Assembly (NCBI RefSeq): GCF_947568905.1
Contig: NC_079167.1
Coordinates: forward strand, 57,226,001-57,290,000
Direction: 5' to 3'
DNA: 64,000 nt
Source of the DNA: Ostrea edulis
Taxonomy: Eukaryota
This document shows, piece by piece, positions 999 through 16,880 of this stretch. The translations under genes and the position numbers were made by a program. How positions within the stretch are numbered: position 1 is the first letter of the stretch; each line of letters begins with the position of its first letter. The notes under the pieces are model-generated. The model was given only the letters and a program-made list of their open reading frames with translations. It was not told where the DNA came from and did no database searches.

Positions 999-1091
999 TG
1001 CATATGATGAAATCAGAAATGCAGCATTGGCACGTTTCCTTGCATCAAAGCTTGTGTAGTGAATAATTCTCTTCTTTGCAAGTGAGAAAGA
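999..1091 (-). CDS. CDC14: CDC14 coding exon 4 ([31 protein letters not shown]); gene continues beyond the left edge
   Basis: Acceptor ttttctttcag, donor GCA|gtaagt, 93 nt, phase 0-0. Hallmark KRANAAFLI motif. The expected next exon (..Y....PEEAY) was not found in 1-998. Confidence 0.97.
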
Positions 1092-1469
1092 CTGAAAGAA
1101 AAAAAAAAGTGTTTTTCTGTCAGCATTATCAGTAATAGCAATTAGATAAACCTCTATCTATGCCAGCAAATTAATGACCTCCACATCTATTCAGCAACAT
1201 CGCATTTACAACCCACATAGCTAGAGCATCAAACAAGTTTGTTTACATGGGCTATTTATAGTACTGTAAACAATGCATACAATATCCTAACCAAATGTTC
1301 TACAGATAAGATTAGTTTTTCATATTTAAAAAAAAAGATGTGGAGCACATGTATGTACTTTTGACATGTCATGTTTTGTAGTTATCAATCTGTAACACAT
1401 TTACCTGGATATTATTATTACATCCTAATTCATAACATTAGTCACAACATTCAGCAAAACATTAGTTAC

Positions 1470-1545
1470 CTTTAGTTTTTTATTTAATTTACAACAATAT
1501 CTGTATAGCTGTGCCAAATTCAGTGGTCCAAAGTCTGCATAGAAA
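1470..1545 (-). CDS. CDC14: CDC14 coding exon 3 ([25 protein letters not shown])
   Basis: Acceptor tgtttcag, donor AAG|gtaact, 76 nt, phases 2 to 0. Hallmark [10 protein letters not shown] motif. Confidence 0.97.
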
Positions 1546-2526
1546 CTGAAACAAAAACAGAGACTTTCTGAAAAACTTGAAAATCCTTGACCTGAAAATA
1601 ATTACTTACATTAGCATAAACTTTTCGGTCAGTGATGAAATATCTAGGTCACAAGAAATTTGTAAACAAGAGACTACATACAAACCACTTTTGTGATTTT
1701 TCAAGTGACTTATTTGTTGATTACACAGATAAGATGACAATAATTGTATTTGAGCATTACATAACAAATGTGAAACTCCTTGAGCTTATAATAGTGTTTG
1801 GTTAATAATTCATGGTTGGTGTAAAAATAGCTCTCAACCGGATATCAATACACAGTTTATAAATTAATAATCCTTATTTCAAATAAAGCAAAGATGGCCA
1901 AAAAGTTTATCGCAAGAAATATGTAAATTGTATAAACTGAAAGCAAGCCAAAGTGTGTAGAGTGTTTTTGGCACAATGCCAAACTTCAATATTCAATACT
2001 GGTTGGTACCAGAAAGTTTTAAACATATATATATACATGATCTCTGTACATGAATTTGATTTGTCATCATTATTTTTTAAAAATCAATACTTATCAATTA
2101 ACAGATTCATGGAAATACTGACAGTTCCTGCTTTAGATATAATTCATAACAAAAGATAGGAGCATCAGATCAAATTATAATTAAACTATCAACATACAAG
2201 AAAAAAAAGTCTAGTATATTTGTCTACCAACAAATACTTTATCTAACAATCAAATCATGAATTCCAAACAAATATTTGTATATGTATAAATCTAAACTAT
2301 CAAAAAGTTTTGATATAACCTTGAAATGTGGGTACAAGTTGCATTTAACTGTATGATGTATCTATACAGTACATGTATATCCACTTTAAATGACATTTTC
2401 GTCTTCTCATAACATGTCTTGATAAAATAAATATACCCATGACCAAGCAAGAATCTCTTTTTTTAATCTAAAGTAGCCTGGCCTGTAGTACTGAAGTTGT
2501 TTTTTCAATACACTGTTCTATCTTAC

Positions 2527-2617
2527 TTTTCATACACAAGCTCATCGTCGACACAGAAATAATGTGTGTGTGCTGTAGATCTTGGCTTTGTTCTCAGTGT
2601 GGCAAAGTACAGTCGAT
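2527..2617 (-). CDS. CDC14: CDC14 coding exon 2 ([31 protein letters not shown])
   Basis: Acceptor aatttcag, donor AA|gtaaga, 91 nt, phases 1 to 2. Close match to the CDC14 motif DRLYFATL...THYF..D.ELVYENF. Confidence 0.97.
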
Positions 2618-2775
2618 CTGAAATTAGTATGAAAAATTTGATGTACCCGGGAAGCACATTCAATAGTAGATGCACATGCAAAATTACACAAGCCTCAAAC
2701 CTTGTCGAGACATGTTTAGAATGAAAGGAAAAGGTCAGAGAAATGTATTTTTTCAGAGTGCAAACATGCTCTCAC

Positions 2776-2824
2776 CTTTTATAAACTCGGAAGCACTCCC
2801 TATAATATCATTTTCATCGGCCAT
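2776..2824 (-). CDS. CDC14: CDC14 dual-specificity phosphatase, coding exon 1 (MADENDIIGSASEFIK, phase-1 end)
   Basis: ATG at 2824-2822, donor G|gtgaga. Joins exon 2 in frame to give ...[14 protein letters not shown], the N-terminus I recognise from CDC14A/B. Confidence 0.93.
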
Positions 2825-3086
2825 TCTTCAGTATAACAATCACTTTCGTTTCAATATAGTCCACTGGTAAAATGTTGCCTTGTACAGTTGTTAGCAAATA
2901 TGCTCTCTGTTTACCTGGTAGGATTCGATGTTTTCCAAGTGCGTAAATACACTATTTCACAACAAAATGTTTCTTTAAAACTCTATAAGTCTCCATGTAT
3001 TTAGTATGATCGAATAAAACTTCCTATTAAAAGTAATTTGATAAAATTATCGACCCCCCTTATCTTCACCAAACTTGACGGCCATG

Positions 3087-3192
3087 TTTGAACTGGAGCA
3101 AAGTTAAGTGCAAAAGATCACGTGATCACGGTCTAGACCAATAGTAGATTACACAACAATTGTCGTCATGGGGATTTCGTAGTCTGGCCAAT
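3087..3192. promoter_or_regulatory. Putative CDC14 proximal promoter motifs
   Basis: TTTGAA (CHR-like) at 3087-3092, palindrome GATCACGTGATC containing an E-box at 3116-3127, CCAAT at 3138-3142 and 3188-3192; all 260-370 bp upstream of the ATG. Motif matches only. Confidence 0.4.
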
Positions 3193-4135
3193 GAAATCTT
3201 TGTTTATAGTTTTCAATGGAAACCCCAGCATCTGTCACAAATTCCAATAATCAACGCATATTTTCATAAATGAGACAAACGGACATAATCGTATTTTCAG
3301 ACATTGCACGAAAATGCAAAATTGTCAAAATATGTTTGTACAAGCTTTGATATATCGTTTCTATATTTTGATTAATGATTTTAGAAAGCAGTCAGTGGTT
3401 TTGCATATCAGGCTTTTATTTGCAATAATGTTATACCATTTTCCCTTTTTTTCTTCTTTTTTTTATGAAGGTTAAGCTTTTTTTTTTTTTAAATTATTAC
3501 TTCCAACACCATTTTGCAAAAATTATTACCTACATTGTAAATAATGATGGTTTATTCCAAGGTTGCGAGCATAAAGTTCAAACATTAGGTATATGAATTC
3601 ATGATTTCTTTTGAAGATAGACTTGTCTATTTTATTTGTCAAAAGAACAAGTTCTAACGACTTACTCTCCTAAAAGTATAATGTTCAGCCATACGAGATA
3701 ATAATAAATAGGCAAAATGTACAATAATTAAATGAATCTACTGGTTTCTTCTATAAATTTGTGAATTAACAGCTGAAAAAAAAAATTAATTTATCTATAT
3801 TATAGTCTGCAAAGGCAAATTAACATCACCGCATAATAACAAATTTGTATCAATATTGACCAAGTCAAGCATAAAAAGGCAATTAAAAAGATTATTTCTA
3901 GCTTTAGAGTAATTTTTACAAGCAAAAACGAGATGATATATACATCGATCTCCGTTATGTACAATGTATGAACAAAATGGAGAATTTGTAATATTACGCA
4001 TATAAAAATCATATTAATGAAGTATACATTTGTGCCTTAGCTTTGTAATTTGAATAATGTTGGTAAATCGTTTCCCAAAAGAAAAATATGATGGTGGGCT
4101 TATGATTTCTGTTATTATAATTTTGCGGAATGAGT

Positions 4136-4270
4136 TGATTGAGATGGCTTCTCTGGCTTCTACATTTAATAAATGTCAATGTTTTATCGAACCAGGTACA
4201 AATGATTAGATTGAGATGGCTTCTCTGGCTTCTAATTTAATAAATTCGAATTAGGTACAAATGATTATTT
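4136..4270. repeat. Two-copy imperfect tandem duplication (~70-bp unit)
   Basis: gattgagatggcttctctggcttcta...aggtacaaatgatta occurs twice in a row, the second copy shortened internally. Confidence 0.8.
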
Positions 4271-4411
4271 GAATAACTCTAATCTGCATCACGGAATATA
4301 GAACTGGTTTTTGTTTCGTGTATCATAGCGGGGGGTAGGGACATAGTTTCATGTTTATTTGAAATGATATCATTTAGGCCTAAGTAGTGTGGGGCGCTAC
4401 CATTACAATTA

Positions 4412-4802
4412 CAGTGGCGGATTTAAGGGGAGGGGGGCGCAGCCGGCGCCCCCCCCCCTAACATTTTCAAATTTTATGTAAATCGCGGTATCTTGTTTAG
4501 AAAAATGTACTAAACGATCGAAGAAGCAATAATTTCTTCCACTCCCAGAGAAATAAATGACAAAATCTTTTGATTTCTTGAATTACTTGATTATGAGAAC
4601 TTAATTTTTTCCAAAAACCCTTAAAATTTGCGTCATTTTATTAATTTCACCTTATTAAAAATGATAAAATATAGTACAAATGACTGAATAGGAGACATGT
4701 TTCAGGTCCTATAAAATCTGTAAAATCCAGGACCAGACCCCCTGCCTCATACACTGCCCCCCCCCCCCCCCCCCGTAACAGCAATTCCTGGATCCGCCCC
4801 TG
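4412..4802. mobile_element. MITE with CAGTGGCGGAT / ATCCGCCCCTG terminal inverted repeats
   Basis: TIRs at both ends, non-coding interior. Related termini recur near 19340-19500 and 26050. Confidence 0.7.
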
Positions 4803-4894
4803 ACAAATTTTGAACACGGAAGTCATTTGGGCGATATAAAACGTCTACTTTGTAAAGTTTGCTAACCTGTTTCTGAATAAAGATAGTCTGTAGA

Positions 4895-5080
4895 TCACAA
4901 GATGCGAACATAGGAAGACCAGTGACAATTCTAGCTGCAGATAATTGTACTTTGTCAAGTTTATCAGTATCGTGAACAGAGCAGACAATTGAAGCATATT
5001 CAAGAGTAGGTCTATAAGTAAATGCTACCACAGATGAATCCTACGATTTTTGAACTTTTAAAAGCTTTTTCAAAAGTCCT
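4895..5080 (-). mobile_element. Decayed CR1/L2-like LINE RT C-terminal fragment
   Basis: Translation YRPTLEYASIV...DKLDKVQLSAARIVTGLP matches the RP.LEYAS..W...LE.VQ..AAR.V region of CR1-group RTs. Confidence 0.75.
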
Positions 5081-6545
5081 ATTTTTTATATGCTTTGTCT
5101 TTAGAAGTATGGAATCAATATACACAGACCAACTGAGGTTGTGTAACAATAATAATTAATTAATGATTTAAATGTGGGGGGGGGGGGGGGGGATACAATG
5201 CAGGATTGAGTTCTAGTATCCAAATATTTATATGTTCATGTACGTATGCAGTGGACATCAATCATGAATCATAGTTAAAGGATGTGCAGACGTAGCTGGG
5301 ATGGACACAAAACATGTAACATGTAGCGCAATATCTATGTTGTTGAATTATAATATATATATACTGCAGATGGCAGCAAGAGACGGCGCTATAGGACCGA
5401 CAGAATGAATTCGGTTGCGAAATATTCACTTTTATTAAATACAGTAATTAACAAAAAGCACCTATATACTCCATGTAATATTTAAATTAACTGCAAGTCA
5501 ATTAATGTTTGTAGATTATAAACTGATGCAGAGCTAGGATAGCAAGAGATGGTGCTATGTAGGAAAATCAATTAATTCCCATAAATAAATACCCAATTCT
5601 ACGTATAAAGCAACATATATAATCATATACACAGCACAGTGCAAAAAATATACTGATATTATTTGTAAGGGTCGTAAACATGTAATTTTACATCTGGACA
5701 GTGTAATATAGAACCACATGGAAATCCAACTCTTCTAATCATGTTTGCATAATAAGTACATATTACATGTTGAAAACTGAATTAATGTGCGCATCAATTC
5801 AACTATTGTTCTCATAGATTCAAGGTGGTGAAATTATTTGTTCGCAAAATTTAACATTTGGAGCTCGGTATACATGTATATGATTTGATGATCTCTGACA
5901 TCTTTAGTTATTTACAACGCCTTTAATATAAAGAATTAATGCGCGCATCAATTGTTTTTAAAGAGAGCAACAATTCATATTAAAGAGTTCATTGATTCAA
6001 TTTTGGATATGTTGAATTGAATGTACTAGTATCTCTAATCATATACATATAGTTGCTCTCTCTAAAAGAATGATTGCGGTCATCGAATTAATGATAATTA
6101 TGGTTCCAGACGAAGGTCATGTTTAACTGTACAATACGTATCCAACTTCCCACCCAAGGATATTTCATGCTTTCTCTCGAACCAATTTTCAAATAAAAAT
6201 AAAAAGAGTTAAGATCTTACACAGCTAGTGAGATAATCTAGGAACAGGAAGCTTTAGGGGGATTTTCTCCTAGAACACCGGGATGGATGCAGGGTTTCAG
6301 TTTAGGGGGAGTGGACCAATCCTCACAAAACCCTGGTGGCGCCAGAGGGATTGCCCCCCCCCCCCCCCCCCCCCCCCCGGAAGCTCCCACATTCTTAAGA
6401 AATTTCATTGCAAAATCTAGCATAGAATGAGCTAGATTTCTGGTACACAGTTTCAAATGAAAAATAAAAATAAAACTATATTCCATCAAGGTGTATATAT
6501 TGAGTTTACTTGGTTTATTTTCAACATAGAGTAAATGCTCTTTCC

Positions 6546-6609
6546 TTAGAACGTAAGTACTAGACACACACAGCGTGAGTAGGAAAATCAAACTTATTTA
6601 ATATATAAG

Positions 6610-6665
<56 letters not shown>

Positions 6666-6767
6666 AAAAAATAAAATCCAATGCTCCTTTAGAACATTGA
6701 ACTTAGAACGTAAGTACTAGACACACACAGCGTGAGTAGGAAAATCAAACTTATTTAATATATAAGC

Positions 6768-6827
<60 letters not shown>

Positions 6828-6873
6828 TAAGTTGAAGTTAAAAGTTTGAGCATTGGATTTTATTTTTTGACCT
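6546..6873. repeat. Duplicated 71-bp unit with two (TA)n microsatellites and a 24-bp inverted segment
   Basis: 6546-6616 equals 6703-6773, each followed by (TA)n; 6663-6686 is the reverse complement of 6848-6871. Confidence 0.9.
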
Positions 6874-7272
6874 TTATTCTACCCCGATACCAAGAAAAAA
6901 TTATTTATTGAATATATATATATATATGAATGCATATTGGACTACAGGGGCTTCGGAATTAAGGAATAAACCATACAAAATTGGGTGTGGTTAGGGAGGC
7001 GGTGTCCCCTTCTGTTCGGAAGAAAATTTAGAAATTTCAAAGGTAATTTGTGCCATTTCAAGTACATAAAATTCTTAGTTTGAAATTTTTGGGGGAATGC
7101 ACCCATACGCCCCTCCATCTTCAATACGCCAGTGACACCAGCCCCCTCCTTCTACAAAGGGATCGAAGGATCTCGCGGCTGACCGGAGAGTCTTAAATTC
7201 ACACAATTCCAGGACATCATATCTTCGCTAGGCAAGGGTTTTCGGTCCACACCGCTCCCCATAATTATCCTT

Positions 7273-7745
7273 GGGTGAAGGGGATTCATGTTTGTTCAAA
7301 TGAAGGGCTATGGTCCCTTCAATAAGGAGATACTCACAAAAATGCAACAATAGGGTGGGGTCATATAAGAATCTTCTCATTAACCATTGGGCCAGGAAAG
7401 TTTAATTTTACATGGAAACTTCCTTACATTGTGCAGATTCAAGTTTTTATATTCATGGCCCCTGGGGGTAGAGTGGGGCCACAATAGGGAATCAAAGTTT
7501 TACATGCGAATATTAGTATATAGGGAAAAGTCTTTATAAATCTTCTTCTCAAGAACCACTAATCCAGAGAAGTTCAGATTTACATGGCAGCTTTCTGATA
7601 TAGTGCAGATTCATGTTTGTAAAAATCATGCCCCCCCCCCCCCCCCTGGGGTAGGTTATAGGCACAATAGGGGATCAAAATTTTACATGCGAATATATAG
7701 GGTTTTTTGTTTTTTTAATATGGGCCAAGGTGACTTAGGCCCCTT
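7273..7745. mobile_element. Non-autonomous Helentron-like element with ~165-bp satellite-type monomers
   Basis: Repeated monomer ...ttctcaagaaccact...tttacatg...gtgcagattca.gttt...catggcccc..ggggtag...cacaataggg.atcaaagttttacatgcgaatat; same family at 33400-33990. Resembles the oyster Cg170/BclI satellite (from recall). Confidence 0.7.
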
Positions 7746-7949
7746 ATTTTCATACTGCGTTACAATTATCACATCGGGCGTATAGTGGGGCATTCATGTC
7801 CTATGGACATATTTCCAGTTTCCTTTACATTCCTGTATTATTGATATACATATATTTTGTATATATTGTATTTGACATACTTCTTGGTGTCTACCTCCAT
7901 TTCCTCGCTATTTAAGTCGTGTGATGTTTGTATGTTATACAGTGAACAA

Positions 7950-8440
7950 ACTGGTTGATAGGCCTCCACATTGTGATTTCTCTTTGTACCAAAATTCATT
8001 AAAATCCCCCAAAGGGTTGAGGAGAAGTTGTGAAGACAAAGTATTTTGAACAGAAAAAATTAAATCCAAGGGCCACAACTCCTTGATAGGCCTCCACATT
8101 GTGATTTCTCTTTGTACCAAAATTCATTAAAATCCCCCAAAGGGTTTAGGAGAAGTTCATCTTCGCAAGCCAAGTGTCCGATTCGCTTACGAAGATGGGA
8201 GAAGTTGTGAAGACAAAGTATTTTGAACAGAAAAAATTAAGTCCAAGGGCCACAACTCCTTTAAAAAACATCGGACAGCATTCCCCTTGCAATATGCACA
8301 GCTCCACATTGTGATCTTTCTTTGTACCAAGTTTCATCAAAATTCCCAAAAGGGTTTAGGAGGAATTGTAAAGACGAAGTTAAACGGACAGACGGACGGA
8401 CGACAGCCGTATAGCATAATTTTTAAGCAGGCGTATAAAA
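7950..8440. mobile_element. Non-autonomous Helentron-like element with ~130-bp internal repeats, one carrying a 40-bp insertion
   Basis: gataggcctccacattgtgatttctctttgtaccaaaattcattaaaatcccccaaagggtt is repeated; ends with gacagacggacggac...gtatagcataat...aagcaggcgtataaaaat. Confidence 0.65.
8158..8197. mobile_element. 40-bp micro-insertion with 13-bp TIRs and a 9-bp TSD
   Basis: GGAGAAGTT at 8149-8157 and 8198-8206 flanks catcttcgcaagc...gcttacgaagatg (12/13 inverted match). The adjacent uninterrupted monomer has a single GGAGAAGTT. Confidence 0.8.
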
Positions 8441-8619
8441 ATGCTTGTACATTAACATGATTAACCATGGCCCTGCTGTTCTTGAAGATTTTTTAAAATG
8501 TTTTTTGATCCCCTATTGTGGCCCCATCCTACCTCCACGGGTCATGATTTGAACAAACTTCAATCTGCACTAACCAGGGGTACTTGCACATTAATATGAA
8601 TATTTATGACCCTGTATTA

Positions 8620-9440
8620 ATTTAAACTCAGGTGCTATTGCAGTTGATAAGCATCCGTCGTCGTCAGTTATCAATTGAACATTTTTAATTTCTTGATAAC
8701 TACCACTCGAATTCTTTCCAAATTTGGTATGAAGCATTTTGGGGACAAGGGGGACATAAATTGTACATTTCAGGACTTCTGCACCCTTGGGGCCCTAGGG
8801 TTGGGACAAAAACTGCCAAAAATTAACCACTTTTCAAAAAGCTCCTTCTCTACAACTGCACATCTTTAAGAAAAATTAAATGCATAGTATTGTAGAGTCA
8901 GAAGCCCTCTACCAAAATTGAAAAACTGTTGTAAAAGTTTGGACTACAGGGCAGGGTCAAACTTGGTATATAGTGTACATGTGTATAAGGTCTGAATAAC
9001 ATTTTCTTTAGTGCTATTGATACTAAATATAAACCAAGTCGATATTTAGAAAGACTAGGTAGCCCTTAACCAAAATTGTTCATGACCCCAGGTGTAAGGG
9101 TTTTTGGTATCATGGTGGGGCCAAACTTGGTATGAAGCAGGTTGGGGACATCAATTGTAAATTTCAGGATTCCAGCACCCCTGGGGCCTTAGGGATGAGG
9201 CAAAAACTGCCAAAATTAACCAATTTTCAAAAATCTTCTTCTCCACAACTGCGCAACTTTAAGAAAATCTAAATGCATAGTGATTGTAAATTTCATGATC
9301 CATTGGGTAAAGGTTTTACCCAAGTATGCTTTGTGGCAAATTTGGTTGAAATTAGCCATGTGGTTCTGGAATAGTCAATATGTTAAAAGTTTATGGATGG
9401 ACTGACAGCAGCTAAAAAGCTCAGATGAGATAAAAAAGTG
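8620..9440. mobile_element. Non-autonomous Helentron-like repeat, opposite orientation to 24804-25952
   Basis: Shares caaaaactgccaaaattaacca.ttttcaaaaatcttctt and ggggacaagggggacataaattgta with the reverse complement of 24804-25952 and 26820-27470. Confidence 0.65.
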
Positions 9441-10152
9441 TATCAAAAACTATGATCAAAACACCTAATAAAATAAGTGTGACTTGCAGGCTCAAAAGTA
9501 CAAATATTTATTCAGAAAACTAACAGTCATAGATAAATATGTAAAACATTACAAAGGGAGAAAACTCACTATCATTTTTAAAGAAACCGACCAAGTAATT
9601 TCATGTTGACCTCTTTATTAAAATGTTTGTAAAATTTGTAAATTCATTTCAAACTTACTGTTACAATGCTCCCAAAGCATTCAAAACTGTTACAAAACAA
9701 GATCTGAATCATGTAAACTTCTATGATAAATGCAAAATATGTAAAAAGTTATTTTAGTATGTATCACAATTTAACACACCCTGAATGCAGATTTGATTGA
9801 TAAATTAAAATCAAAATGTACAATATCATTATAGAAAAATCTGCATATCAAAGTTCCTCTTACAAGGCTTAAATACACACACACATACACATGATTAAAT
9901 ACTAATGAAAAAGTTTTGGAGTTGAAAAGTTTGTTACAATTGCTAACTAAAAACACTGGCTAGGTCACTGAGTAATGAATAAATATTAAAAAATAATGTC
10001 TTAAAATAAATAGATCTGTAGTTTCATTCAGAAACATAGTTATAACATAATAAATTGTACTGTTCTTCAGCATGTGATGATGTCAAGACATTACACATGT
10101 ATTACTAGTTTTAACATGATCTGAACACATAGGTGAATTTTGATTTTCATAT

Positions 10153-10280
10153 TTAAACATCAATGATTGGTTTATCTTTTGGAAAGCTAACTGGCTTGAC
10201 ACCTGCAATCTGTAAAAGTTCATTAATTGGAGTCTGGTCTGTGGAATTTTCACAAATATGCATGAAATGGACCTCCTCAT
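10153..10280 (-). CDS. PRXL2C: PRXL2C/AAED1 exon 7, last (DEEVHFMHICENSTDQTPINELLQIAGVKPVSFPKDKPIIDV*)
   Basis: Acceptor (t)n gtag, phase 1, TAA at 10155-10153. Matches the PRXL2C C-terminal pattern IHF.H.D....DH.PIN.VLQ.VGV..V.F......I.V. Confidence 0.93.
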
Positions 10281-10458
10281 CTACAAAAAAAAAAAAAGAA
10301 ATAATCAAAAAATCACCAATAACAAATATAGTTTTCAAAATTTCAGGTACAAACAATTTCAAAAGAATGTTTAATTCAAAATTATTCACTGTTTCTGTGC
10401 TTCATTCTTTATAACAAAAACTTTTTAAGAGAGAGGTCACCAACTTTGGCTGTCATAC

Positions 10459-10581
10459 CTGGTCCTAGGATGTACTCTGCCCCTTGCTGCCGTACATGAC
10501 CCTGGTATTCCTGAGACTTCATAGCTCTCCATGTACTACTCAAAATTCCTGATATCATGCCATGTTTAAGGTGCTTGTTCT
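10459..10581 (-). CDS. PRXL2C: PRXL2C exon 6 (NKHLKHGMISGILSSTWRAMKSQEYQGHVRQQGAEYILGP)
   Basis: Acceptor tcattgcag, donor CAG|gtatga, 123 nt, phase 1-1. Matches the W.A....FQGD..QQGG..ILGPG motif. Confidence 0.93.
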
Positions 10582-11639
10582 CTGCAATGAATAAAACCTA
10601 GAGAATGTTTTTATGAAAAACAAATGTCTCCTCAGCTCCCCAAATCGGAAGTGCTCCAAAAGAAACCTCCTCCCCTTAATGTACTGCAAGGTATGGAGGA
10701 GAAAATCACAAGGAGGAACATAGACATTATGAACTCTGAAAAGCCATATGGGAGAAGTGTTCACAAACTATTTTACACCCTCCACCCCTCAGATACACTA
10801 TAACTATATCTTTAAGGATAACAATCCTGTTCCTACAATATGCACATATGCAAATGGCATTAAAATATTGTATTTTCAAGTCTATCATATAAGCCATATA
10901 GAAGGAGAAGCATTCACAAGCTATATTAACATCCTCCACCCGTCTTAGATCCACTATAACTTTTATGAAAATAATTGGATCCTCCTGTCCCCACAATATG
11001 CACATCTACAAAAGGCAATGAAGCATTGCACAAGTTTTCAAGTATATCCAATAAGCCATATAGGAGGAGAAGCATTCCCAAGATTTTGTGACAGACAGAA
11101 GGACAGATGGTTAGATGAACAGAAACCTATGTCTCCTCCTGGAAATTTTAACAGGCATTTTGTGACTTATCATAAAATGATTTTCAAATCATTCTCAAAA
11201 GAGGATACACTATTAGTTAATAAGTAATCATTAAATAGTAACTTGTAAAATTTTGCATGCAATATATACAGTCATATGTTTTGTAGAATGCTGAAATCAA
11301 AAGAAAATGTTGTTTTATTTCTTTCTTTGGGATATGCAGACCCATCATTGTTGCAATGTAATAACATCATAGAAAATTTATGATTAAACCTTAGAATGAA
11401 TATTCTAAATGTATTTTAAGGTGTCCAATAAATAAATGGGAAATAAATATCAAAAGTGCATAAATACACATGTATAATCAAACTATTGGTTTAAATGCTA
11501 TAAATTTAATTCATCACCAATTTCATTATGATGCCACACTTTCAAAATCACAAAAGGTAGCACTTTAACTAGAATTAATTGCAGTCATACATGTGCAACA
11601 CTATCACTAAAGATGAAAATAAAAGATGTGTTTGTGATT

Positions 11640-12098
11640 AAGGCAGCAAAGTAATTCTGGTACCCAAAGAAAGGTCTTGTCACTAGGAATACACAAGAAA
11701 AGCCCTATCACTAACTATTTATAGCCAAGGTTAAAGTTTTTCAAAAGTAGATCAAACTCCAAAGTCAAGGTCATGAAGTAAAAGAATTTGTTATCTAAAG
11801 ATAGATCTTGTCAAAAGGAATACACATGTGAAATATAAAAGCCATATCACTAAACATTCAAAAGTTATGGCCTAGGTTAAAGTTTTTCAAAAGTACAAGA
11901 AAAGAAGGTAACAAGATAAAAATTTTGGTACCAAAAGAAAGGTCTTGTCACAAGGAAAACACATGTGAAATATGAAAGCCCTATCACCATCCATTCAAAA
12001 GTTTTGGGCAAGGTTAAAATTTTTGTGGACAAACAGATAAACATACTAACTGACCAAAAACTATATGCCCCCGAATCTCTGATTATGGGGACATTAAA
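11640..12098. mobile_element. Helentron-like element with ~145-bp tandem monomers in PRXL2C intron 5
   Basis: aaggtcttgtca...ggaatacacatgtgaaatat.aaagccctatcac...cattcaaaagtt.tgg.caaggttaaa repeated about three times; subterminal hairpin gcccccga...tatgggga. Confidence 0.65.
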
Positions 12099-12560
12099 AT
12101 ATGTCAGAAAAACAATGGCCTATCATTTTTAATATAATATCTTCGTAACCACATTCAACTAAATTCTAAGACATAGCTGAGCCTTAGGTCTCCATTTCAA
12201 ATACCATATACTCATGTAATTTTGACACATTGGAAATGTGGACTTTTTTGGTGAATGAGGAATATTTGTCAAAAAGGAAAATACCAAAATTTCTAATCAT
12301 ATCAATGACACACTTATTAAATGAAAATGTGCCTAAGAAAATGAAGCACTAATATTTCAAACTACATTCTTTAGGAAAATCTGCTAAAATATTCCCAACG
12401 AGAAAATTCCGAATATATGGTAGTCTTGCATCAATAGCAGCAATAACTATTAACTAAGAAACAATAATATTACAATATCAGAGAATTTTTTCCACCTGTA
12501 TGTCATCATTCATATTCCAACTTTACATAGCATACAATTGAGTAAAAACTTGTTTCTTAC

Positions 12561-12672
12561 TTCCTGATCCTTTTCCAAACTGAGGGTTGCTTTTCATACC
12601 AAGGACATTGTAGAGTTCCCTCTCAGGGTCGGTATACATTGTATACATATATCCTGTTTCTTTTTTGAATGA
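12561..12672 (-). CDS. PRXL2C: PRXL2C exon 5 (SFKKETGYMYTMYTDPERELYNVLGMKSNPQFGKGSG)
   Basis: Acceptor ttttgtttag, donor A|gtaaga, 112 nt, phases 0 to 1. Motif TGY...Y.DPERE.Y..LGMK. Confidence 0.95.
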
Positions 12673-13051
12673 CTAAACAAAAGACAAACTAAATAACTAT
12701 ATGATCAAAAGTTATTCCAACACAATTTTTTCTTATAATAATCTGGAGTTGATAAAGAATGCCAATACTAGAAACTAAACTTTTGTTGGCCTAAAACTCT
12801 TCAATTTTATCAAATATTGTGAAATACATGTACAGTTACTACATTTTCTTATATTCTGTCATCATTTACTTTCTGTAAATCTGTTTCATAGTTTTTAAAA
12901 ACAGATTACTAGTAATTCATATTTATACACACCACACTGAAATCAATAACATTTAAAATTAAGATGAATTCAAATATCTTAAAATGGATTAAATATTTAA
13001 GTTCCTGACTATATTACAAGACATGCAAATGCTTAAATCACACATACGCAC

Positions 13052-13105
13052 CTGTATAAATTTATTGGGAGCAGGACCAATCACAACTATTCTTACACCA
13101 GCTTC
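13052..13105 (-). CDS. PRXL2C: PRXL2C exon 4 (EAGVRIVVIGPAPNKFIQ)
   Basis: Acceptor ttttgtag, donor CAG|gtgcgt, 54 nt, phase 0-0. Matches EA.V.L.VIG. Confidence 0.93.
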
Positions 13106-13974
13106 CTACAAAATTAAGTTTACATGTATTCATTTATATTTTAAAACTAGAACTGGTATCATGGAACCAATACACAGTCTATAACACATAACCAAATTTG
13201 AACATTAACATTAATCATGTTTTTGTTTCTGTCGTATGAATACAGTTTAAACTAAGATAGGGCACAACTATAAATAGGGCCTTAAACTTGACAACTCAAA
13301 GCACATAATCAACAGCTAATATGTTTTACGTTATGACCATTGAGATAAGCAGAGACCTTTAACATCTTGCAACATGAGTTTAGACATTTAATCAGCCTCT
13401 TCATTTAACACGGAAAATAGAACACAGTCAATGTAAACAGTGCATTGTGACGTTATATTAGCTGCAATGGTTCTTCTTTCAAACCAAGCAATTATCAACA
13501 AGCTTGTCTGGAATTCAAAAACATTTATATTTCCAAACAATTTATTTATTTTTTCCACGGGGTTGTCAAAGAAGTATATCTCTGTGCGGTGACATTTTCC
13601 CAGACGTATTATGGGTAATCCCCATCATTTTTTAGCTGATGAAGAGCAAATCATGTCACTCAAATGTGTAATCATTGGAGTAAGCTCATCACATCACTTT
13701 GCGATGCTGGCTTCGGTTGCTATTACATTTATAACAAATGAAATAATCCAATTTCCTTTGTGGGATCAATACGCAAGTTCCGAGTTACCCAAAAGTTATT
13801 TCCCTTTGTCAAACTCTTTCGCATTTTATGACATATGGTGGGTACACAATGTATACATAATATCGTAGACTGGCATTGTACATAACGATTACGTATGATA
13901 AATGTAATAAAAGCGTAACTTTTGTTTATATCAGTCACTGGTATGCATATTCTGGCCATATCAAGCATAACTTG

Positions 13975-14532
13975 TTTGAATAAGCTGCTACCAGTCCTGA
14001 CATCACGCCACCTGTCATATAAGACCCGTGGTCGAGTGTATAACACCTGTGTACGGAGCGCTATGCTCCATGCCAGTGAGACCTGGGCACTGACCAAGCC
14101 AAATCTTCATCGCCTACTACGCAATGACAGGGCCATGATAAGACAGATCTGTAACATCAAGCCTGAAGATATGGTCACTGTAAGTTCAACTGAATTGCTG
14201 GGGCGGCTTGGCATCGACGACCTCGACCTCATCTTAAGGGAAAGGAGACTCCGCTGGTATGGCCACGTTGTCAGATCCAGCAGTGCAGTCAAGTGCGCTT
14301 TAAATATACAAGTTCCTGGTCGGCCAATGCTATCTTGGAGAGAGTTGACGGAGAAAGATCGTAGAGAATGGAAGCTCTCAACTGTTGACCCTCAAGACCG
14401 GAAAGAATGGAGATCTGAGGTGAGATCTGCCATGCATGCAGCCAGCCAGATACCTGGAAGGGGGCCCACTAGTGTGGACACTACCCGTGATACTGCACGG
14501 AAATAAAAAGGAACCGACAACAACAACAACAT
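13975..14532 (+). mobile_element. 5'-truncated RTE-clade LINE in PRXL2C intron 3
   Basis: Open frame LLPVLTSRHLSYKTRGRVYNTCVRSAMLHASETW...LRWYGHVVR...W......DR..WR is the RT C-terminal region of RTE elements; it is followed by an A-rich tract and a (CAA)n tail at about 14517-14532. Confidence 0.88.
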
Positions 14533-15017
14533 CAAATTGGCTATTGAATCATTATTCGTTTCCTCTTCTACATGAGTGACGCTTTTATCAAAGAAAGATG
14601 GCAATTAACAATATCTGTTTGAGCCATTTTGTTATCCAATACTCATAAACTCACTAAAGTTGCCTTTTCCCTGAGATAGGATGGTCTCAGAAACTCTGGA
14701 TATCATCTTTTAAGAAATAATACAACAATAGTAATTAGCAAATGTACCCACTGTCATCATATTTTACGTCATAATTTACGGAAGAGTTCGACAAAGGGAA
14801 ATAACTCTTGGGGAACTCGGAACTTCCGTATTAGCACAAGTCAATGTTTTCCCTATATAATCTCAACAACTGTTCAGGTAATATCAAACAAATGTAAATG
14901 CGAGGTATAGGCTAAATTTTTTTACAATGCTGCCCCATACAGGGACAATACAAGAACAATGCAAAGCTCTCACATATAAGTTAAATGGTTTGAAATATTA
15001 AGGTATGATGTGAAGGT

Positions 15018-15160
15018 CAGTGGCGTAGCTAGGTTTGAAATATTTGGAAGCGGGAGGTCTGGGGGGCTGCTGAGGACATTTTTCATAATATGTGTAAAAT
15101 ATTTCAAAATATTTGTAAGCACGTGCATATGAACAGTGCTACAGTGTAGCTACGCCACTG
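15018..15160. mobile_element. 143-bp MITE in PRXL2C intron 3
   Basis: CAGTGGCGTAGCT / AGCTACGCCACTG perfect 13-bp TIRs; AAGGT directly repeated on both sides. Confidence 0.8.
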
Positions 15161-15232
15161 AAGGTTATGTTGTCAAAGAAAGTATTTTTAATTCATATCA
15201 CGTGCCTAAGAAAATGAACAATAAATACATAC

Positions 15233-15264
15233 CTGTAAAAATTCTAATGGTACCTTTGCTAAAT
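15233..15264 (-). CDS. PRXL2C: PRXL2C exon 3, 32-nt microexon (DLAKVPLEFLQ)
   Basis: Acceptor ttctaatcag, donor CAG|gtatgt, phases 1 to 0. Restores EDLAK.P..FLQ between exons 2 and 4. Confidence 0.92.
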
Positions 15265-15405
15265 CTGATTAGAAAGAAAAGATATACATATTATACCATG
15301 CACATAAAATACTCAAAAATATCAATGACAAATAAAAAAACCTTTTTACTTCTAAAATAAAAACAAACTGAAGTTGAGATTCTGATTATAGTTGAATTGA
15401 CATAC

Positions 15406-15442
15406 CTTCAATGTAGTCTTTACAAATAAAGCACAGGAAATG
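15406..15442 (-). CDS. PRXL2C: PRXL2C exon 2, 37-nt microexon with the CxxC motif (HFLCFICKDYIE)
   Basis: Acceptor ctattacag, donor G|gtatgt, phases 0 to 1. Matches HFLC.ICKEYVE; Cys codons are TGC and TGT. Confidence 0.93.
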
Positions 15443-15611
15443 CTGTAATAGATTGATACAAGTCATTTTATCTTATACTAGCGATTAATTTCAAAATAAA
15501 ATATATTCGGCCAGTGCAGGAGTCAGGGACACACAACCCCTATCTAAGTTCTCAATTAAGATATTGTATATACAAAGTATAAGCGTAAAAAATAACAAAA
15601 AAATAACATAC

Positions 15612-15821
15612 CCTTGAGAATATAACTATCGTTTTCTGATGTTTATAGATATCTCCGAATTTTATTTTGTTTCCTCCTTCATCCAAGACAAACATGTCCC
15701 TTGCTTTCGAAAAGTTGAATTTAAAGTCAGACGGTTCTGGTCTTTCTCCCCTAGACATTTCTAAATGATTTATTTCGTCTGCTGTGATTTCAGTTCCGTC
15801 TTTTTCTTCTGTCTTAGACAT
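15612..15821 (-). CDS. PRXL2C: PRXL2C exon 1 (MSKTEEK...VLDEGGNKIKFGDIYKHQKTIVIFSR)
   Basis: ATG at 15821-15819, donor AGG|gtatgt, 210 nt. Matches VLD..G..V.FG.L......VVVF.R preceding HFLC. Seven exons give 231 aa. Confidence 0.92.
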
Positions 15822-16069
15822 TTTGAAGACAAACGTGTTCCTTCAAGCAAGTCAAAACTAACTTGTTTGCTATTGATACGAATTCAATGTTAAATAGACG
15901 CTTCTGTATAAAGCATTTCGTTGACCCCTTAATAATATTCGAAACGTACATGGAATCAGTATCCGAGATAAATAAATACATAGCTGTCAAATATATAAAA
16001 CATCTATAAATTGTCAATGTTGTACCCAGTATGTCATTGTGCATAGAAACTCTATCCGGAACGTAAGTT

Positions 16070-16215
16070 TGGTTCGCTTTACGTGAGTTTGTTCGACAGA
16101 TTGATAACTTCTTCATAACAAATTATTAATTTGTTATAGCAAATTATCAATCTGTTATAACAAATAATTTATTTGTTATTTCAAATTGCTAATTTGTTAT
16201 AAAAGATTATAAATT
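16070..16215. repeat. Dispersed repeat with ~14-bp ataacaaatt/aatttgttat internal units; also about 17720-17850, 19015-19160 and 20640-20825
   Basis: The same self-complementary motifs recur at four loci in both orientations; likely the core of a non-autonomous Helitron-like element. Confidence 0.6.
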
Positions 16216-16619
16216 TGAGGGTGCGGAAAGGGGGGGGGGGGGTAGTCCTTTACCGTCCAAAATTGTAAATTTCATGATCCTAGGGCCGGATAAGGGTTTG
16301 ATCTCAGGGTGGTGTCAAAATCATTATAATGATTTGAAGGACTTCAAATTTGAATATATATTTAGGAATAGCAGAAAAAAATGTATAAAAAATCTGGTGA
16401 ATTTTATAGGACTGAAACGAGCTGCCCTCTTCACGATACGACGCGTATTGCATTTACTTATGCCGTGCGATTCAATACTTTCAATTGATACGATACAATT
16501 TACAGAAGAAACCAATAATAACATTGAAGAAAAAATTCATTACCAAAATTCTAAATCATAATTATAAAGCAAAATGTTTCTGAACTGCCAAACCGTAAGA
16601 TGTCTGTTGGCTCTGTTTA

Positions 16620-16880
16620 AACCACAAGAGCGCAGAGCTCAGACCAGGACTATATAATGATGTAGCGGATTGTGTAGCAGCTGATTGACATTCCATCTAC
16701 ACTCCTGATACCAACCATTTCTCCAAGAGGGAACAACATCACCTTCCTTGTGCCGTATGTTAGGACTACAGTTTACCAGAAATCATTTTTTTCCAGATGG
16801 GATTAGGATTTGGAACTCTTTACCATCTGAGACTGTCAATGCAACATCTTTAGACAGCTTCTAGTGCCAGATCCAGTCCA
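16620..16880 (+). mobile_element. Decayed CR1-like LINE 3' end
   Basis: Frames give QERRAQTR..M..I..QLIDIP and YQKSFFPDGIRIWNSLPSETVNATSLDSF, the SFFP.T...WN.LP terminus of CR1/L2-group ORF2. Confidence 0.78.

What the first reader, a model, noticed from the sequence alone, without database searches (positions are those of the whole stretch)
999..15821. PRXL2C lies directly upstream of CDC14 on the same strand, apparently as in human 9q22
Seen: a complete PRXL2C gene and the CDC14 5' end are neighbours, both on the minus strand, with ~7.3 kb between the PRXL2C stop and the CDC14 ATG and no recognisable gene in between. Recalled, not checked: human PRXL2C (AAED1/C9orf21) sits immediately upstream of CDC14B in the same orientation. 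Inference: the pair may have stayed linked since the protostome-deuterostome ancestor, which would suggest shared cis-regulation or read-through between a CxxC redox protein and a Cys-dependent phosphatase.
Basis: partly seen in the sequence, partly recalled or inferred. Interest (0 to 1): 0.72.

Follow-up and report, generated by a model that had tools for sequence, protein, structure and literature searches.

The report
Ancient PRXL2C–CDC14 gene neighbour pair
In this oyster genome a small redox gene (PRXL2C) lies just upstream of the cell-cycle phosphatase gene CDC14 on the same strand, as it does in a chiton, an annelid, a pipefish and mammals. The neighbourhood is therefore an old inherited one, but the two genes look like separate transcription units, not a co-transcribed pair.

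Summary
On the minus strand there is a complete seven-exon PRXL2C gene (ATG 15821, stop 10153-10155, 231 aa). It is followed by CDC14 coding exons 1-4 (ATG 2824, exon 4 ends at 999). The stop-to-ATG gap is 7,328 nt and contains only repeat and transposon debris.

Both orthology calls hold. The oyster protein scores 313 bits against a PRXL2C profile, against 48 bits for PRXL2B. Its intron positions and phases match chiton, crinoid, nemertean and fish PRXL2C. The CDC14 exons pass the Pfam DSPn threshold, and spliced contigs confirm their junctions.

The same tandem arrangement is present in Liolophura (chiton), Dimorphilus (annelid) and Syngnathus (teleost). The literature places the two genes next to each other in human and bats. 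The pair is broken in a nemertean, a priapulid and two echinoderms, and undetermined in five species, with Pinctada probably linked. Ancestral bilaterian linkage is well supported.

Read-through is not supported. CDC14 exon 1 starts at about 3093, just downstream of a CCAAT / CCAAT / E-box / CHR promoter module that is conserved between oyster, pearl oyster and chiton, and no transcript contig crosses the spacer. The finding is one more conserved ancestral microsyntenic pair, of moderate-to-low interest. The scan had not noted this pair before.

The parts
15612..15821 (-). PRXL2C coding exon 1 (ATG 15821-15819; 70 codons, ends in phase 0)
   Evidence: ORF and GT donor. 87% identical to an oyster fragment, P0001. 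Aligns to Saccostrea exon 1.
15406..15442 (-). PRXL2C exon 2 (37 nt), encoding HFLCFICKDYIE with the CxxC motif
   Evidence: The same 37-nt exon is present in chiton, crinoid, Saccostrea and Lineus.
15233..15264 (-). PRXL2C exon 3, a 32-nt mini-exon (DLAKVPLEFLQ)
   Evidence: Phase-aware AG...GT search; BLOSUM score 43 against 10 for the next independent candidate. The same 32-nt exon is present in chiton, crinoid and Saccostrea.
13052..13105 (-). PRXL2C exon 4 (54 nt)
12561..12672 (-). PRXL2C exon 5 (112 nt; YTDPERELY motif)
   Evidence: Weak Pfam AhpC-TSA_2 match on the fragment.
10459..10581 (-). PRXL2C exon 6 (123 nt)
10153..10280 (-). PRXL2C exon 7 (128 nt, including the TAA stop at 10155-10153)
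   Evidence: The 128-nt last exon is conserved in six species.
13922..14506 (+). LINE-type reverse-transcriptase C-terminal fragment inside PRXL2C intron 3, on the opposite strand
   Evidence: ORF translation. No Pfam family above threshold. Identified from its sequence character only.
3094..10152 (.). Spacer between the PRXL2C stop and the CDC14 transcription unit. It contains repeats, a TA microsatellite (6596-6826), an RT-like remnant (4747-5031, minus strand) and high-copy elements (about 3759-4862 and 5783-6150).
3078..3199 (-). CDC14 core promoter module: inverted CCAAT (3192-3188), inverted CCAAT (3142-3138), TCACGTGA E-box (3124-3119), and a CHR-like TTCAAA followed by CATGGC (3092-3081)
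   Evidence: Motif positions relative to the ATG nearly coincide in oyster (-368/-318/-300/-268) and chiton (-371/-322/-305/-275). Alignment. Local alignment z = 4.7 against chiton and 9.2 against the Pinctada flank, with 0 of 300 shuffles reaching either score. The RNA-like contig ends at 3093.
2776..3093 (-). CDC14 exon 1: 5' UTR of at least 269 nt (3093-2825) plus CDS 2824-2776 (MADENDIIGSASEFIK)
   Evidence: Contigs X1 (to 3070) and X2 (to 3093) joined to exon 2. The N-terminus is identical over 15 aa to Dimorphilus CDC14.
2527..2617 (-). CDC14 exon 2
   Evidence: Pfam DSPn 33.4 bits. Joints.
1470..1545 (-). CDC14 exon 3 ([26 protein letters not shown])
   Evidence: Joints.
999..1091 (-). 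CDC14 exon 4, the last CDC14 exon found in the window; the gene continues beyond the window start
   Evidence: Pfam DSPn 32.3 bits. Contig X2 carries 892 further transcript bases beyond this exon.

Best explanation
This is an ancestral bilaterian gene adjacency, a conserved microsyntenic pair. A PRXL2C orthologue lies immediately upstream of CDC14 in head-to-tail orientation. The arrangement was inherited from the protostome-deuterostome ancestor and is still kept in molluscs (oyster, chiton, probably pearl oyster), an annelid and vertebrates, but it has been lost in several other lineages.

In the oyster the two genes are separate transcription units. PRXL2C ends at 10153. CDC14 starts at about 3093, directly downstream of its own TATA-less promoter of the cell-cycle type (two inverted CCAAT boxes, an E-box and a CHR-like element), which is conserved across molluscs.

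Inferred, not shown: the pair persists because CDC14's upstream control region abuts the 3' end of PRXL2C. In compact genomes only about 1 kb separates them, so few breakpoints would be harmless (mild regulatory constraint plus a small target). Co-transcription or a redox-phosphatase functional coupling is not the likely cause.
For: Gene models and orthology:
- The oyster protein scores 313 bits against the PRXL2C profile, like named orthologues at 319-370 bits. PRXL2B (PDB 9us9) scores 48 bits.
- It is 79% identical to Saccostrea PRXL2C and 42-46% identical to vertebrate PRXL2C.
- Exon sizes 37/32/54/~110/123/128 and their phases are shared with chiton, crinoid and Saccostrea. In fish and Lineus the same exons appear fused.
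- CDC14 exons pass the DSPn threshold and are spliced as modelled.

Synteny (PRXL2C then CDC14, same strand):
- Dimorphilus, 1.0 kb gap.
- Syngnathus, 1.1 kb gap.
- Liolophura, 8.5 kb stop-to-ATG.
- Human and bat adjacency from the literature.
- The other flanking genes differ in every lineage: OvoA in Dimorphilus, an F-box/LRR gene in Syngnathus, HABP4 and ZNF510 in human. Only the pair itself survived.

Independent transcription:
- Contigs end at 3070 and 3093. Depth is zero in X1 and X2 over 3391-3942 and no listed piece lies between 3283 and 4488.
- The promoter module is conserved in sequence and in position.
- The spacer is otherwise unconserved and full of repeats.
Against: - The pair is not adjacent in Lineus, Priapulus, Anneissia or Amphiura, so any constraint is weak or lineage-dependent.
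- Neutral survival cannot be excluded: hundreds of ancestral pairs survive in slowly rearranging genomes.
- No non-bilaterian, amphioxus, hemichordate or arthropod could be sampled.
- The RNA evidence is from assembled contigs of runs only guessed to be RNA. These cannot show rare read-through transcripts or exact transcript ends.
- Human strand orientation was not verified with a tool.
Confidence: 0.8

Rival explanations
1. Neutral relic. The adjacency is ancestral but under no selection. It simply has not yet been broken in slowly rearranging lineages (molluscs, annelids, vertebrates) and has been broken elsewhere.
For: Broken in 4 of 8 scorable lineages. The oyster and chiton spacers tolerate 7-8 kb of transposon insertions, and bats tolerate an endogenous retrovirus between the genes. 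No conserved non-coding sequence exists apart from the CDC14 promoter itself.
Against: All other neighbours were reshuffled around the pair in every lineage that keeps it. That is the pattern Irimia et al. 2012 (PMC3514665) attribute to constraint. Retention in at least three deeply separated clades with the same order and orientation is unlikely for an average pair.
Confidence: 0.4
2. Regulatory coupling. CDC14 enhancers lie in or around PRXL2C (a bystander model like a genomic regulatory block), or the two genes share elements and are co-expressed, and this selects against separation.
For: The pair is retained while the surroundings are scrambled. In compact genomes the CDC14 promoter lies within about 1 kb of the PRXL2C 3' end. 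PMC8251932 lists long-range chromatin contacts of both human genes with sequences in the same 9q22.3 deleted region.
Against: CDC14 is not a developmental transcription factor. Comparing the window with Saccostrea across PRXL2C gave only exons and repeats, with no intronic conserved elements. The two oyster promoters share none of the scanned CCAAT or E-box motifs.
Confidence: 0.3
3. Read-through or conjoined transcription, or direct functional coupling (a CxxC redox protein servicing the catalytic cysteine of CDC14), keeps the genes in one unit.
For: Same strand, with PRXL2C upstream, in all lineages that keep the pair. Both proteins use reactive cysteines (general knowledge).
Against: CDC14 transcripts in X1 and X2 begin at about 3093 with their own UTR exon. 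No listed contig piece lies between 3283 and 4488. The single loose end at 3034 matches nothing in the window, including PRXL2C exons. Candidate poly(A) signals lie 0.5-1.5 kb after the PRXL2C stop. The pair is dispensable in four lineages.
Confidence: 0.06
4. Chance or convergent adjacency: the neighbourhoods arose independently in spiralians and vertebrates.
For: None specific. The patchy distribution could in principle reflect gains instead of losses.
Against: With about 2x10^4 genes, the chance that a given gene becomes the immediate same-strand downstream neighbour of another is about 10^-4 to 10^-5 per lineage. Here the same order and orientation occur in molluscs, an annelid and vertebrates.
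Confidence: 0.02

Closest known systems
Conserved ancestral microsyntenic pairs (CAMPs) of Irimia et al. 2012, Genome Res 22:2356 (PMC3514665)
   Same: Two unrelated genes stay adjacent, with conserved order and orientation, between protostomes and deuterostomes while the surrounding genes are reshuffled.
   Different: The published pair list could not be consulted because no supplement is held, so I cannot say whether this pair is already in it. It is a head-to-tail pair without a developmental gene, so it fits neither of their two main explanatory classes (5'-5' co-regulated pairs, genomic regulatory blocks) cleanly.
Human 9q22.32 PRXL2C (AAED1) - CDC14B neighbourhood
   Same: The same two gene families are immediate neighbours, about 20 kb apart. 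The genes are also adjacent in bats, and in a teleost they have the same orientation as in the oyster.
   Different: Vertebrates have CDC14A and CDC14B paralogues. The pipefish neighbour looks CDC14B-like, a judgement made from memory of the human sequences. The oyster has a single pre-duplication CDC14. Human strand orientation was not checked with a tool.
Genomic regulatory blocks (bystander gene plus developmental target)
   Same: A small gene lies next to a larger regulated gene, with long-term linkage.
   Different: CDC14 is not a trans-dev gene. No conserved non-coding elements were found in PRXL2C introns. The only conserved non-coding block is the CDC14 core promoter.
CCAAT/CHR promoters of G2/M cell-cycle genes (NF-Y plus DREAM/MuvB targets)
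   Same: TATA-less, with two CCAAT boxes about 50 nt apart followed by a CHR-like TTCAAA close to the transcript start.
   Different: The assignment is by motif only. No binding or cell-cycle expression data exist here, and an additional TCACGTGA E-box is present.

Membership tests
PRXL2C (AAED1) orthologue group | Full-length similarity to PRXL2C clearly above that to the paralogues PRXL2A/B | tested here: met
   313 bits against profile A1, which was built from 12 PRXL2C proteins. Solved PRXL2B (9us9) scores 48 bits against the same profile. All 120 listed hits of that profile are named PRXL2C/AAED1, uncharacterised or hypothetical, or carry no name; none is named PRXL2A or PRXL2B.
PRXL2C (AAED1) orthologue group | AhpC/TSA_2 thioredoxin-fold domain with a CxxC motif | tested here: met
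   The CFIC motif lies in exon 2. Exon fragments give weak AhpC-TSA_2 matches. Full-length orthologues carry PF13911.
PRXL2C (AAED1) orthologue group | Shared intron positions and phases with animal PRXL2C genes | tested here: met
   Exact spliced mapping in six species. Exons of 37, 32, 54, ~110, 123-126 and 128 nt have identical phases.
CDC14 dual-specificity phosphatase | N-terminal DSPn domain (PF14671) | tested here: met
   Exons 2 and 4 each score above the gathering threshold. There is 53-96% identity to the annotated DSPn+DSPc genes of Dimorphilus and chiton.
CDC14 dual-specificity phosphatase | Catalytic DSPc domain with the HCX5R motif | not testable with these tools
It lies outside the window. 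Contig X2 continues for 892 nt beyond exon 4.
Conserved ancestral microsyntenic pair | Orthologous genes adjacent in both protostomes and deuterostomes, with conserved orientation | tested here: met
   Oyster (window), chiton, annelid, teleost, and mammals from the literature.
Conserved ancestral microsyntenic pair | Retention above the neutral expectation | not tested
   Only 13 species could be sampled (12 look-ups). The score is 4 linked, 1 probably linked, 4 unlinked and 4 undetermined. No matched control pairs were examined.
Read-through / conjoined gene | Transcripts joining exons of both genes, or continuous transcription across the spacer | tested here: inconclusive
   None was seen in contigs of X1 and X2, and CDC14 has its own first exon.
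Genomic regulatory block | A developmental target gene plus conserved non-coding elements in the bystander's introns | tested here: not met
   CDC14 is not a trans-dev gene. Comparing the window with Saccostrea gives only exons and repeats within PRXL2C.

The most novel reading that the evidence does not exclude
The PRXL2C-CDC14 tandem is actively maintained: CDC14 regulatory input depends on the PRXL2C transcription unit (elements in its 3' part, or transcriptional interference or priming from PRXL2C into the CDC14 promoter). This would couple a redox-responsive gene to a mitotic-exit and ciliogenesis phosphatase since the bilaterian ancestor.
Probability: 0.15. Interest if true: 0.55.

Novelty: new member of a known kind. 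Interest (0 to 1): 0.3.

Why it matters
Deeply conserved gene pairs are rare natural experiments on whether gene order matters. This one is simple (two genes, one orientation). It is present in experimentally tractable vertebrates and absent in echinoderms, a nemertean and a priapulid. That makes it a usable test case for constraint on head-to-tail pairs, which are less well explained than bidirectional pairs or developmental regulatory blocks.

A by-product is a CDC14 core promoter module alignable between bivalves and a chiton (inverted CCAAT, inverted CCAAT, E-box, CHR, at nearly identical distances from the ATG). Non-coding conservation is uncommon at that evolutionary distance.

As a discovery it is modest. 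The phenomenon is well known, the human adjacency is visible in any genome browser, and no evidence for a functional link between the two proteins emerged.

Tried and rejected
1. The first PRXL2C model had a frame break between exon 2 (which ends in phase 1) and the 54-nt exon. A phase-aware search resolved it by finding the 32-nt mini-exon.
2. tblastn of the oyster CDC14 N-terminus found no CDC14 exons in the downstream flanks of Pinctada, Lottia, Lingula, Saccostrea, Pecten, Lineus, Priapulus, Anneissia or Amphiura. For the first five this is uninformative, because the flank is at most 10 kb or the contig ends.
3. A search for OvoA upstream of oyster PRXL2C found none in the window.
4. Cross-phylum conserved non-coding elements in the spacer: none beyond the promoter block.
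5. The loose end at 3034 in X1 was tested as a possible splice from PRXL2C. It has no match in the window.
6. Literature: no paper links AAED1, C9orf21 or PRXL2C with CDC14 as a conserved pair. No supplement is held for Irimia 2012. There was no hit in the supplements of PMC8851819.
7. The third homologue search, with a crinoid query, aimed to reach cnidarian, amphioxus or hemichordate PRXL2C and found none. This is a limit of the word-based search, not evidence of absence.
8. A CDC14-side search was not possible. No full-length CDC14 protein was available by reference, and exon-sized queries are barred by the length filter.
9. I fetched no contig that I took for human.


Full report
**What is in the window.**
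That fits the 79% protein identity of the PRXL2C gene modelled here to Saccostrea cucullata PRXL2C.

On the minus strand I reconstructed a complete PRXL2C gene of seven coding exons: 15821-15612, 15442-15406, 15264-15233, 13105-13052, 12672-12561, 10581-10459 and 10280-10153. All have canonical AG/GT borders. The total is 696 nt, giving 231 aa plus TAA. The 32-nt third exon was missing from my first model, which had a frame break. A phase-aware search found it with a score of 43, against 10 for the next independent candidate.

Downstream on the same strand lie CDC14 exons 1-4:
- exon 1, CDS 2824-2776
- exon 2, 2617-2527
- exon 3, 1545-1470
- exon 4, 1091-999

Together they encode 103 residues. 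Exons 2 and 4 each pass the Pfam DSPn gathering score on their own.

**The spacer.**
No spacer ORF matches a Pfam family and nothing in 1-17000 matches Rfam. The spacer contains tandem and dispersed repeats, a TA microsatellite at about 6596-6826 and an RT-like remnant at 4747-5031. DNA contigs pile up to a depth of about 97,000 over 4495-4678, against a single-copy baseline of about 8. These are high-copy mobile-element remains. 'No recognisable gene in between' therefore holds.

**Orthology.**
The oyster protein scores 313 bits against a profile of 12 PRXL2C proteins from fish, axolotl, crinoids, a priapulid, a brachiopod, a nemertean, an annelid and molluscs. Bona fide orthologues score 319-370 bits. 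The only solved relative, prostamide/prostaglandin F synthase (PRXL2B, 9us9), scores 48 bits against the same profile. None of the 120 listed hits of that profile is named PRXL2A or PRXL2B: they are named PRXL2C/AAED1, uncharacterised or hypothetical, or carry no name.

Exact spliced mapping shows the same exon sizes and phases (37/32/54/~110/123/128) in Saccostrea, chiton and crinoid. In pipefish the 37- and 32-nt exons are fused, and in Lineus the 32- and 54-nt exons are fused.

**Synteny.**
I used all 12 context look-ups on PRXL2C orthologues.

Same arrangement (PRXL2C, then CDC14, same strand, next gene):
- Dimorphilus gyrociliatus, an annelid, with a 1.0 kb gap.
- Syngnathus typhle, a teleost, with a 1.1 kb gap.
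- Liolophura sinensis, a chiton, with 8.5 kb from stop to ATG.

From the literature:
- Human CDC14B (9:96,490,241-96,619,843) and PRXL2C (9:96,639,577-96,655,317) are neighbours (PMC8251932).

Not adjacent:
- Lineus longissimus: a Tudor gene on the opposite strand.
- Priapulus: PI3K p85.
- Anneissia: a 2OG-Fe(II) oxygenase.
- Amphiura: a kinase.

Undetermined:
- Lingula and Saccostrea: the contig ends 8.5 and 6.5 kb downstream.
- Lottia: nothing within 10 kb.
- Pecten: a tandem PRXL2C duplicate comes first.
- Pinctada: nothing is annotated within 10 kb. However, the last 100 nt of its flank, 9.9 kb downstream and in the same orientation, align to the oyster CDC14 promoter block. The alignment has z = 9.2, with 0 of 300 shuffles reaching it. 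The pair is probably linked there too.

In every lineage that keeps the pair, the other neighbours differ. Independent origin of the same order and orientation in spiralians and vertebrates is extremely improbable, so the adjacency dates at least to the protostome-deuterostome ancestor. It has been lost several times.

**How the two genes are transcribed.**
Two runs guessed to be RNA (X1, X2) contain spliced contigs with exactly the modelled CDC14 joints: 1091|1470, 1545|2527 and 2617|2776. The first exon extends upstream of the ATG to 3070 (X1) and 3093 (X2, at the end of the contig). A separate low-depth contig covers 3119-3282. There is no depth at all over 3391-3942 and no unique contig further into the spacer. 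The DNA runs X3 and X6 cover the whole stretch without these joints, as expected.

Just upstream of 3093 lie two inverted CCAAT boxes, a TCACGTGA E-box and a TTCAAA element followed by CATGGC. Their positions relative to the ATG are:

| Species | CCAAT 1 | CCAAT 2 | E-box | TTCAAA |
|---|---|---|---|---|
| Oyster | -368 | -318 | -300 | -268 |
| Chiton | -371 | -322 | -305 | -275 |

The two regions align over about 120 nt, with z = 4.7 and 0 of 300 dinucleotide shuffles reaching the score. Dimorphilus shows ATTGG and TCACGTGA at similar distances but no significant alignment. The pipefish shows none.

This is the architecture known for NF-Y/CHR-controlled G2/M genes. That is established knowledge of the promoter class; binding was not tested here. 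The PRXL2C promoter region contains none of the CCAAT or E-box motifs. A single loose end at 3034 in X1 matches nothing in the window, so it is not a splice from PRXL2C.

CDC14 therefore has its own conserved promoter about 7 kb downstream of PRXL2C. There is no positive evidence for read-through. Contigs cannot exclude rare read-through transcripts, and I could not lay reads on the PRXL2C 3' end because only one call was allowed. Candidate poly(A) signals lie at 9619, 9512 and 8689.

**Why the pair persists.**
This part is inference. Three readings remain:
- neutral survival;
- mild regulatory constraint, because the CDC14 upstream region abuts PRXL2C, with only about 1 kb between them in compact genomes;
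- true coupling.

Reshuffling of everything else around the pair favours some constraint, following the logic of Irimia et al. 2012. Four independent losses, tolerance of kilobases of transposon or retroviral insertions, and the absence of conserved intronic or spacer elements other than the promoter favour weak or no constraint. Nothing supports a redox-phosphatase functional link.

**Comparison with what is known, and novelty.**
The finding is an instance of a conserved ancestral microsyntenic pair. I found no paper that names this pair as deeply conserved. The Irimia pair list is not held, so prior listing cannot be excluded. I rate it a new member of a known kind, with interest 0.3.

**Limits.**
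- No cnidarian, cephalochordate, hemichordate or arthropod orthologue was reached.
- Human strand orientation and the CDC14B-versus-CDC14A identity of the pipefish neighbour rest on memory.
- I fetched no contig that I took for human.

Noticed in passing
L003:5850-9672 (Dimorphilus) and L002:1-7361 (Lingula): A ~750-aa FGE-sulfatase(+methyltransferase) gene sits head-to-head immediately upstream of PRXL2C in both an annelid and a brachiopod. Its domain make-up is that of OvoA, the ovothiol synthase. This is a second possibly conserved neighbour with a thiol/redox theme. It is absent from the oyster window and from the other fetched loci.
   Followed up: partly
L003:10190-10411: The annotated Dimorphilus PRXL2C model (P0096, 200 aa) skips a 69-nt exon that encodes the CxxC segment (HFLCFVCKEYVEDLSLISDNLLK). 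The exon is present with AG/GT borders inside the annotated intron. This is probably an annotation omission or an alternative isoform.
   Followed up: partly
L011:23619-25122 (Pecten maximus): A second PRXL2C-like gene (224 aa) lies 8.5 kb downstream of the first on the same strand, a tandem duplication in scallops.
   Followed up: no
window:2776-2824 vs L003:12054-12100: The first 15 residues of CDC14 (MADENDIIGSASEFI) are identical between the oyster and the annelid Dimorphilus, and nearly so in the chiton (MADDNDVIGSASEYI). This is unusually strong conservation for an N-terminal tail.
   Followed up: no
window:54409-54807 (-): An exon-sized ORF matches rhodopsin-family 7TM receptors (PF00001, 66.6 bits). 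A GPCR gene lies about 39 kb upstream of PRXL2C.
   Followed up: no
window:13922-14506 (+) and 4747-5031 (-): Reverse-transcriptase-like remnants of LINE-type elements lie in PRXL2C intron 3 and in the spacer. The spacer copy belongs to a very high-copy family, with DNA contig depth up to ~10^4 times baseline.
   Followed up: partly
window:11650-12100: A tandemly repeated unit inside PRXL2C intron 5 has several copies in the Saccostrea locus as well (L010:2861-3818 and 15952-16779). It is a repeat family shared between oyster genera.
   Followed up: no
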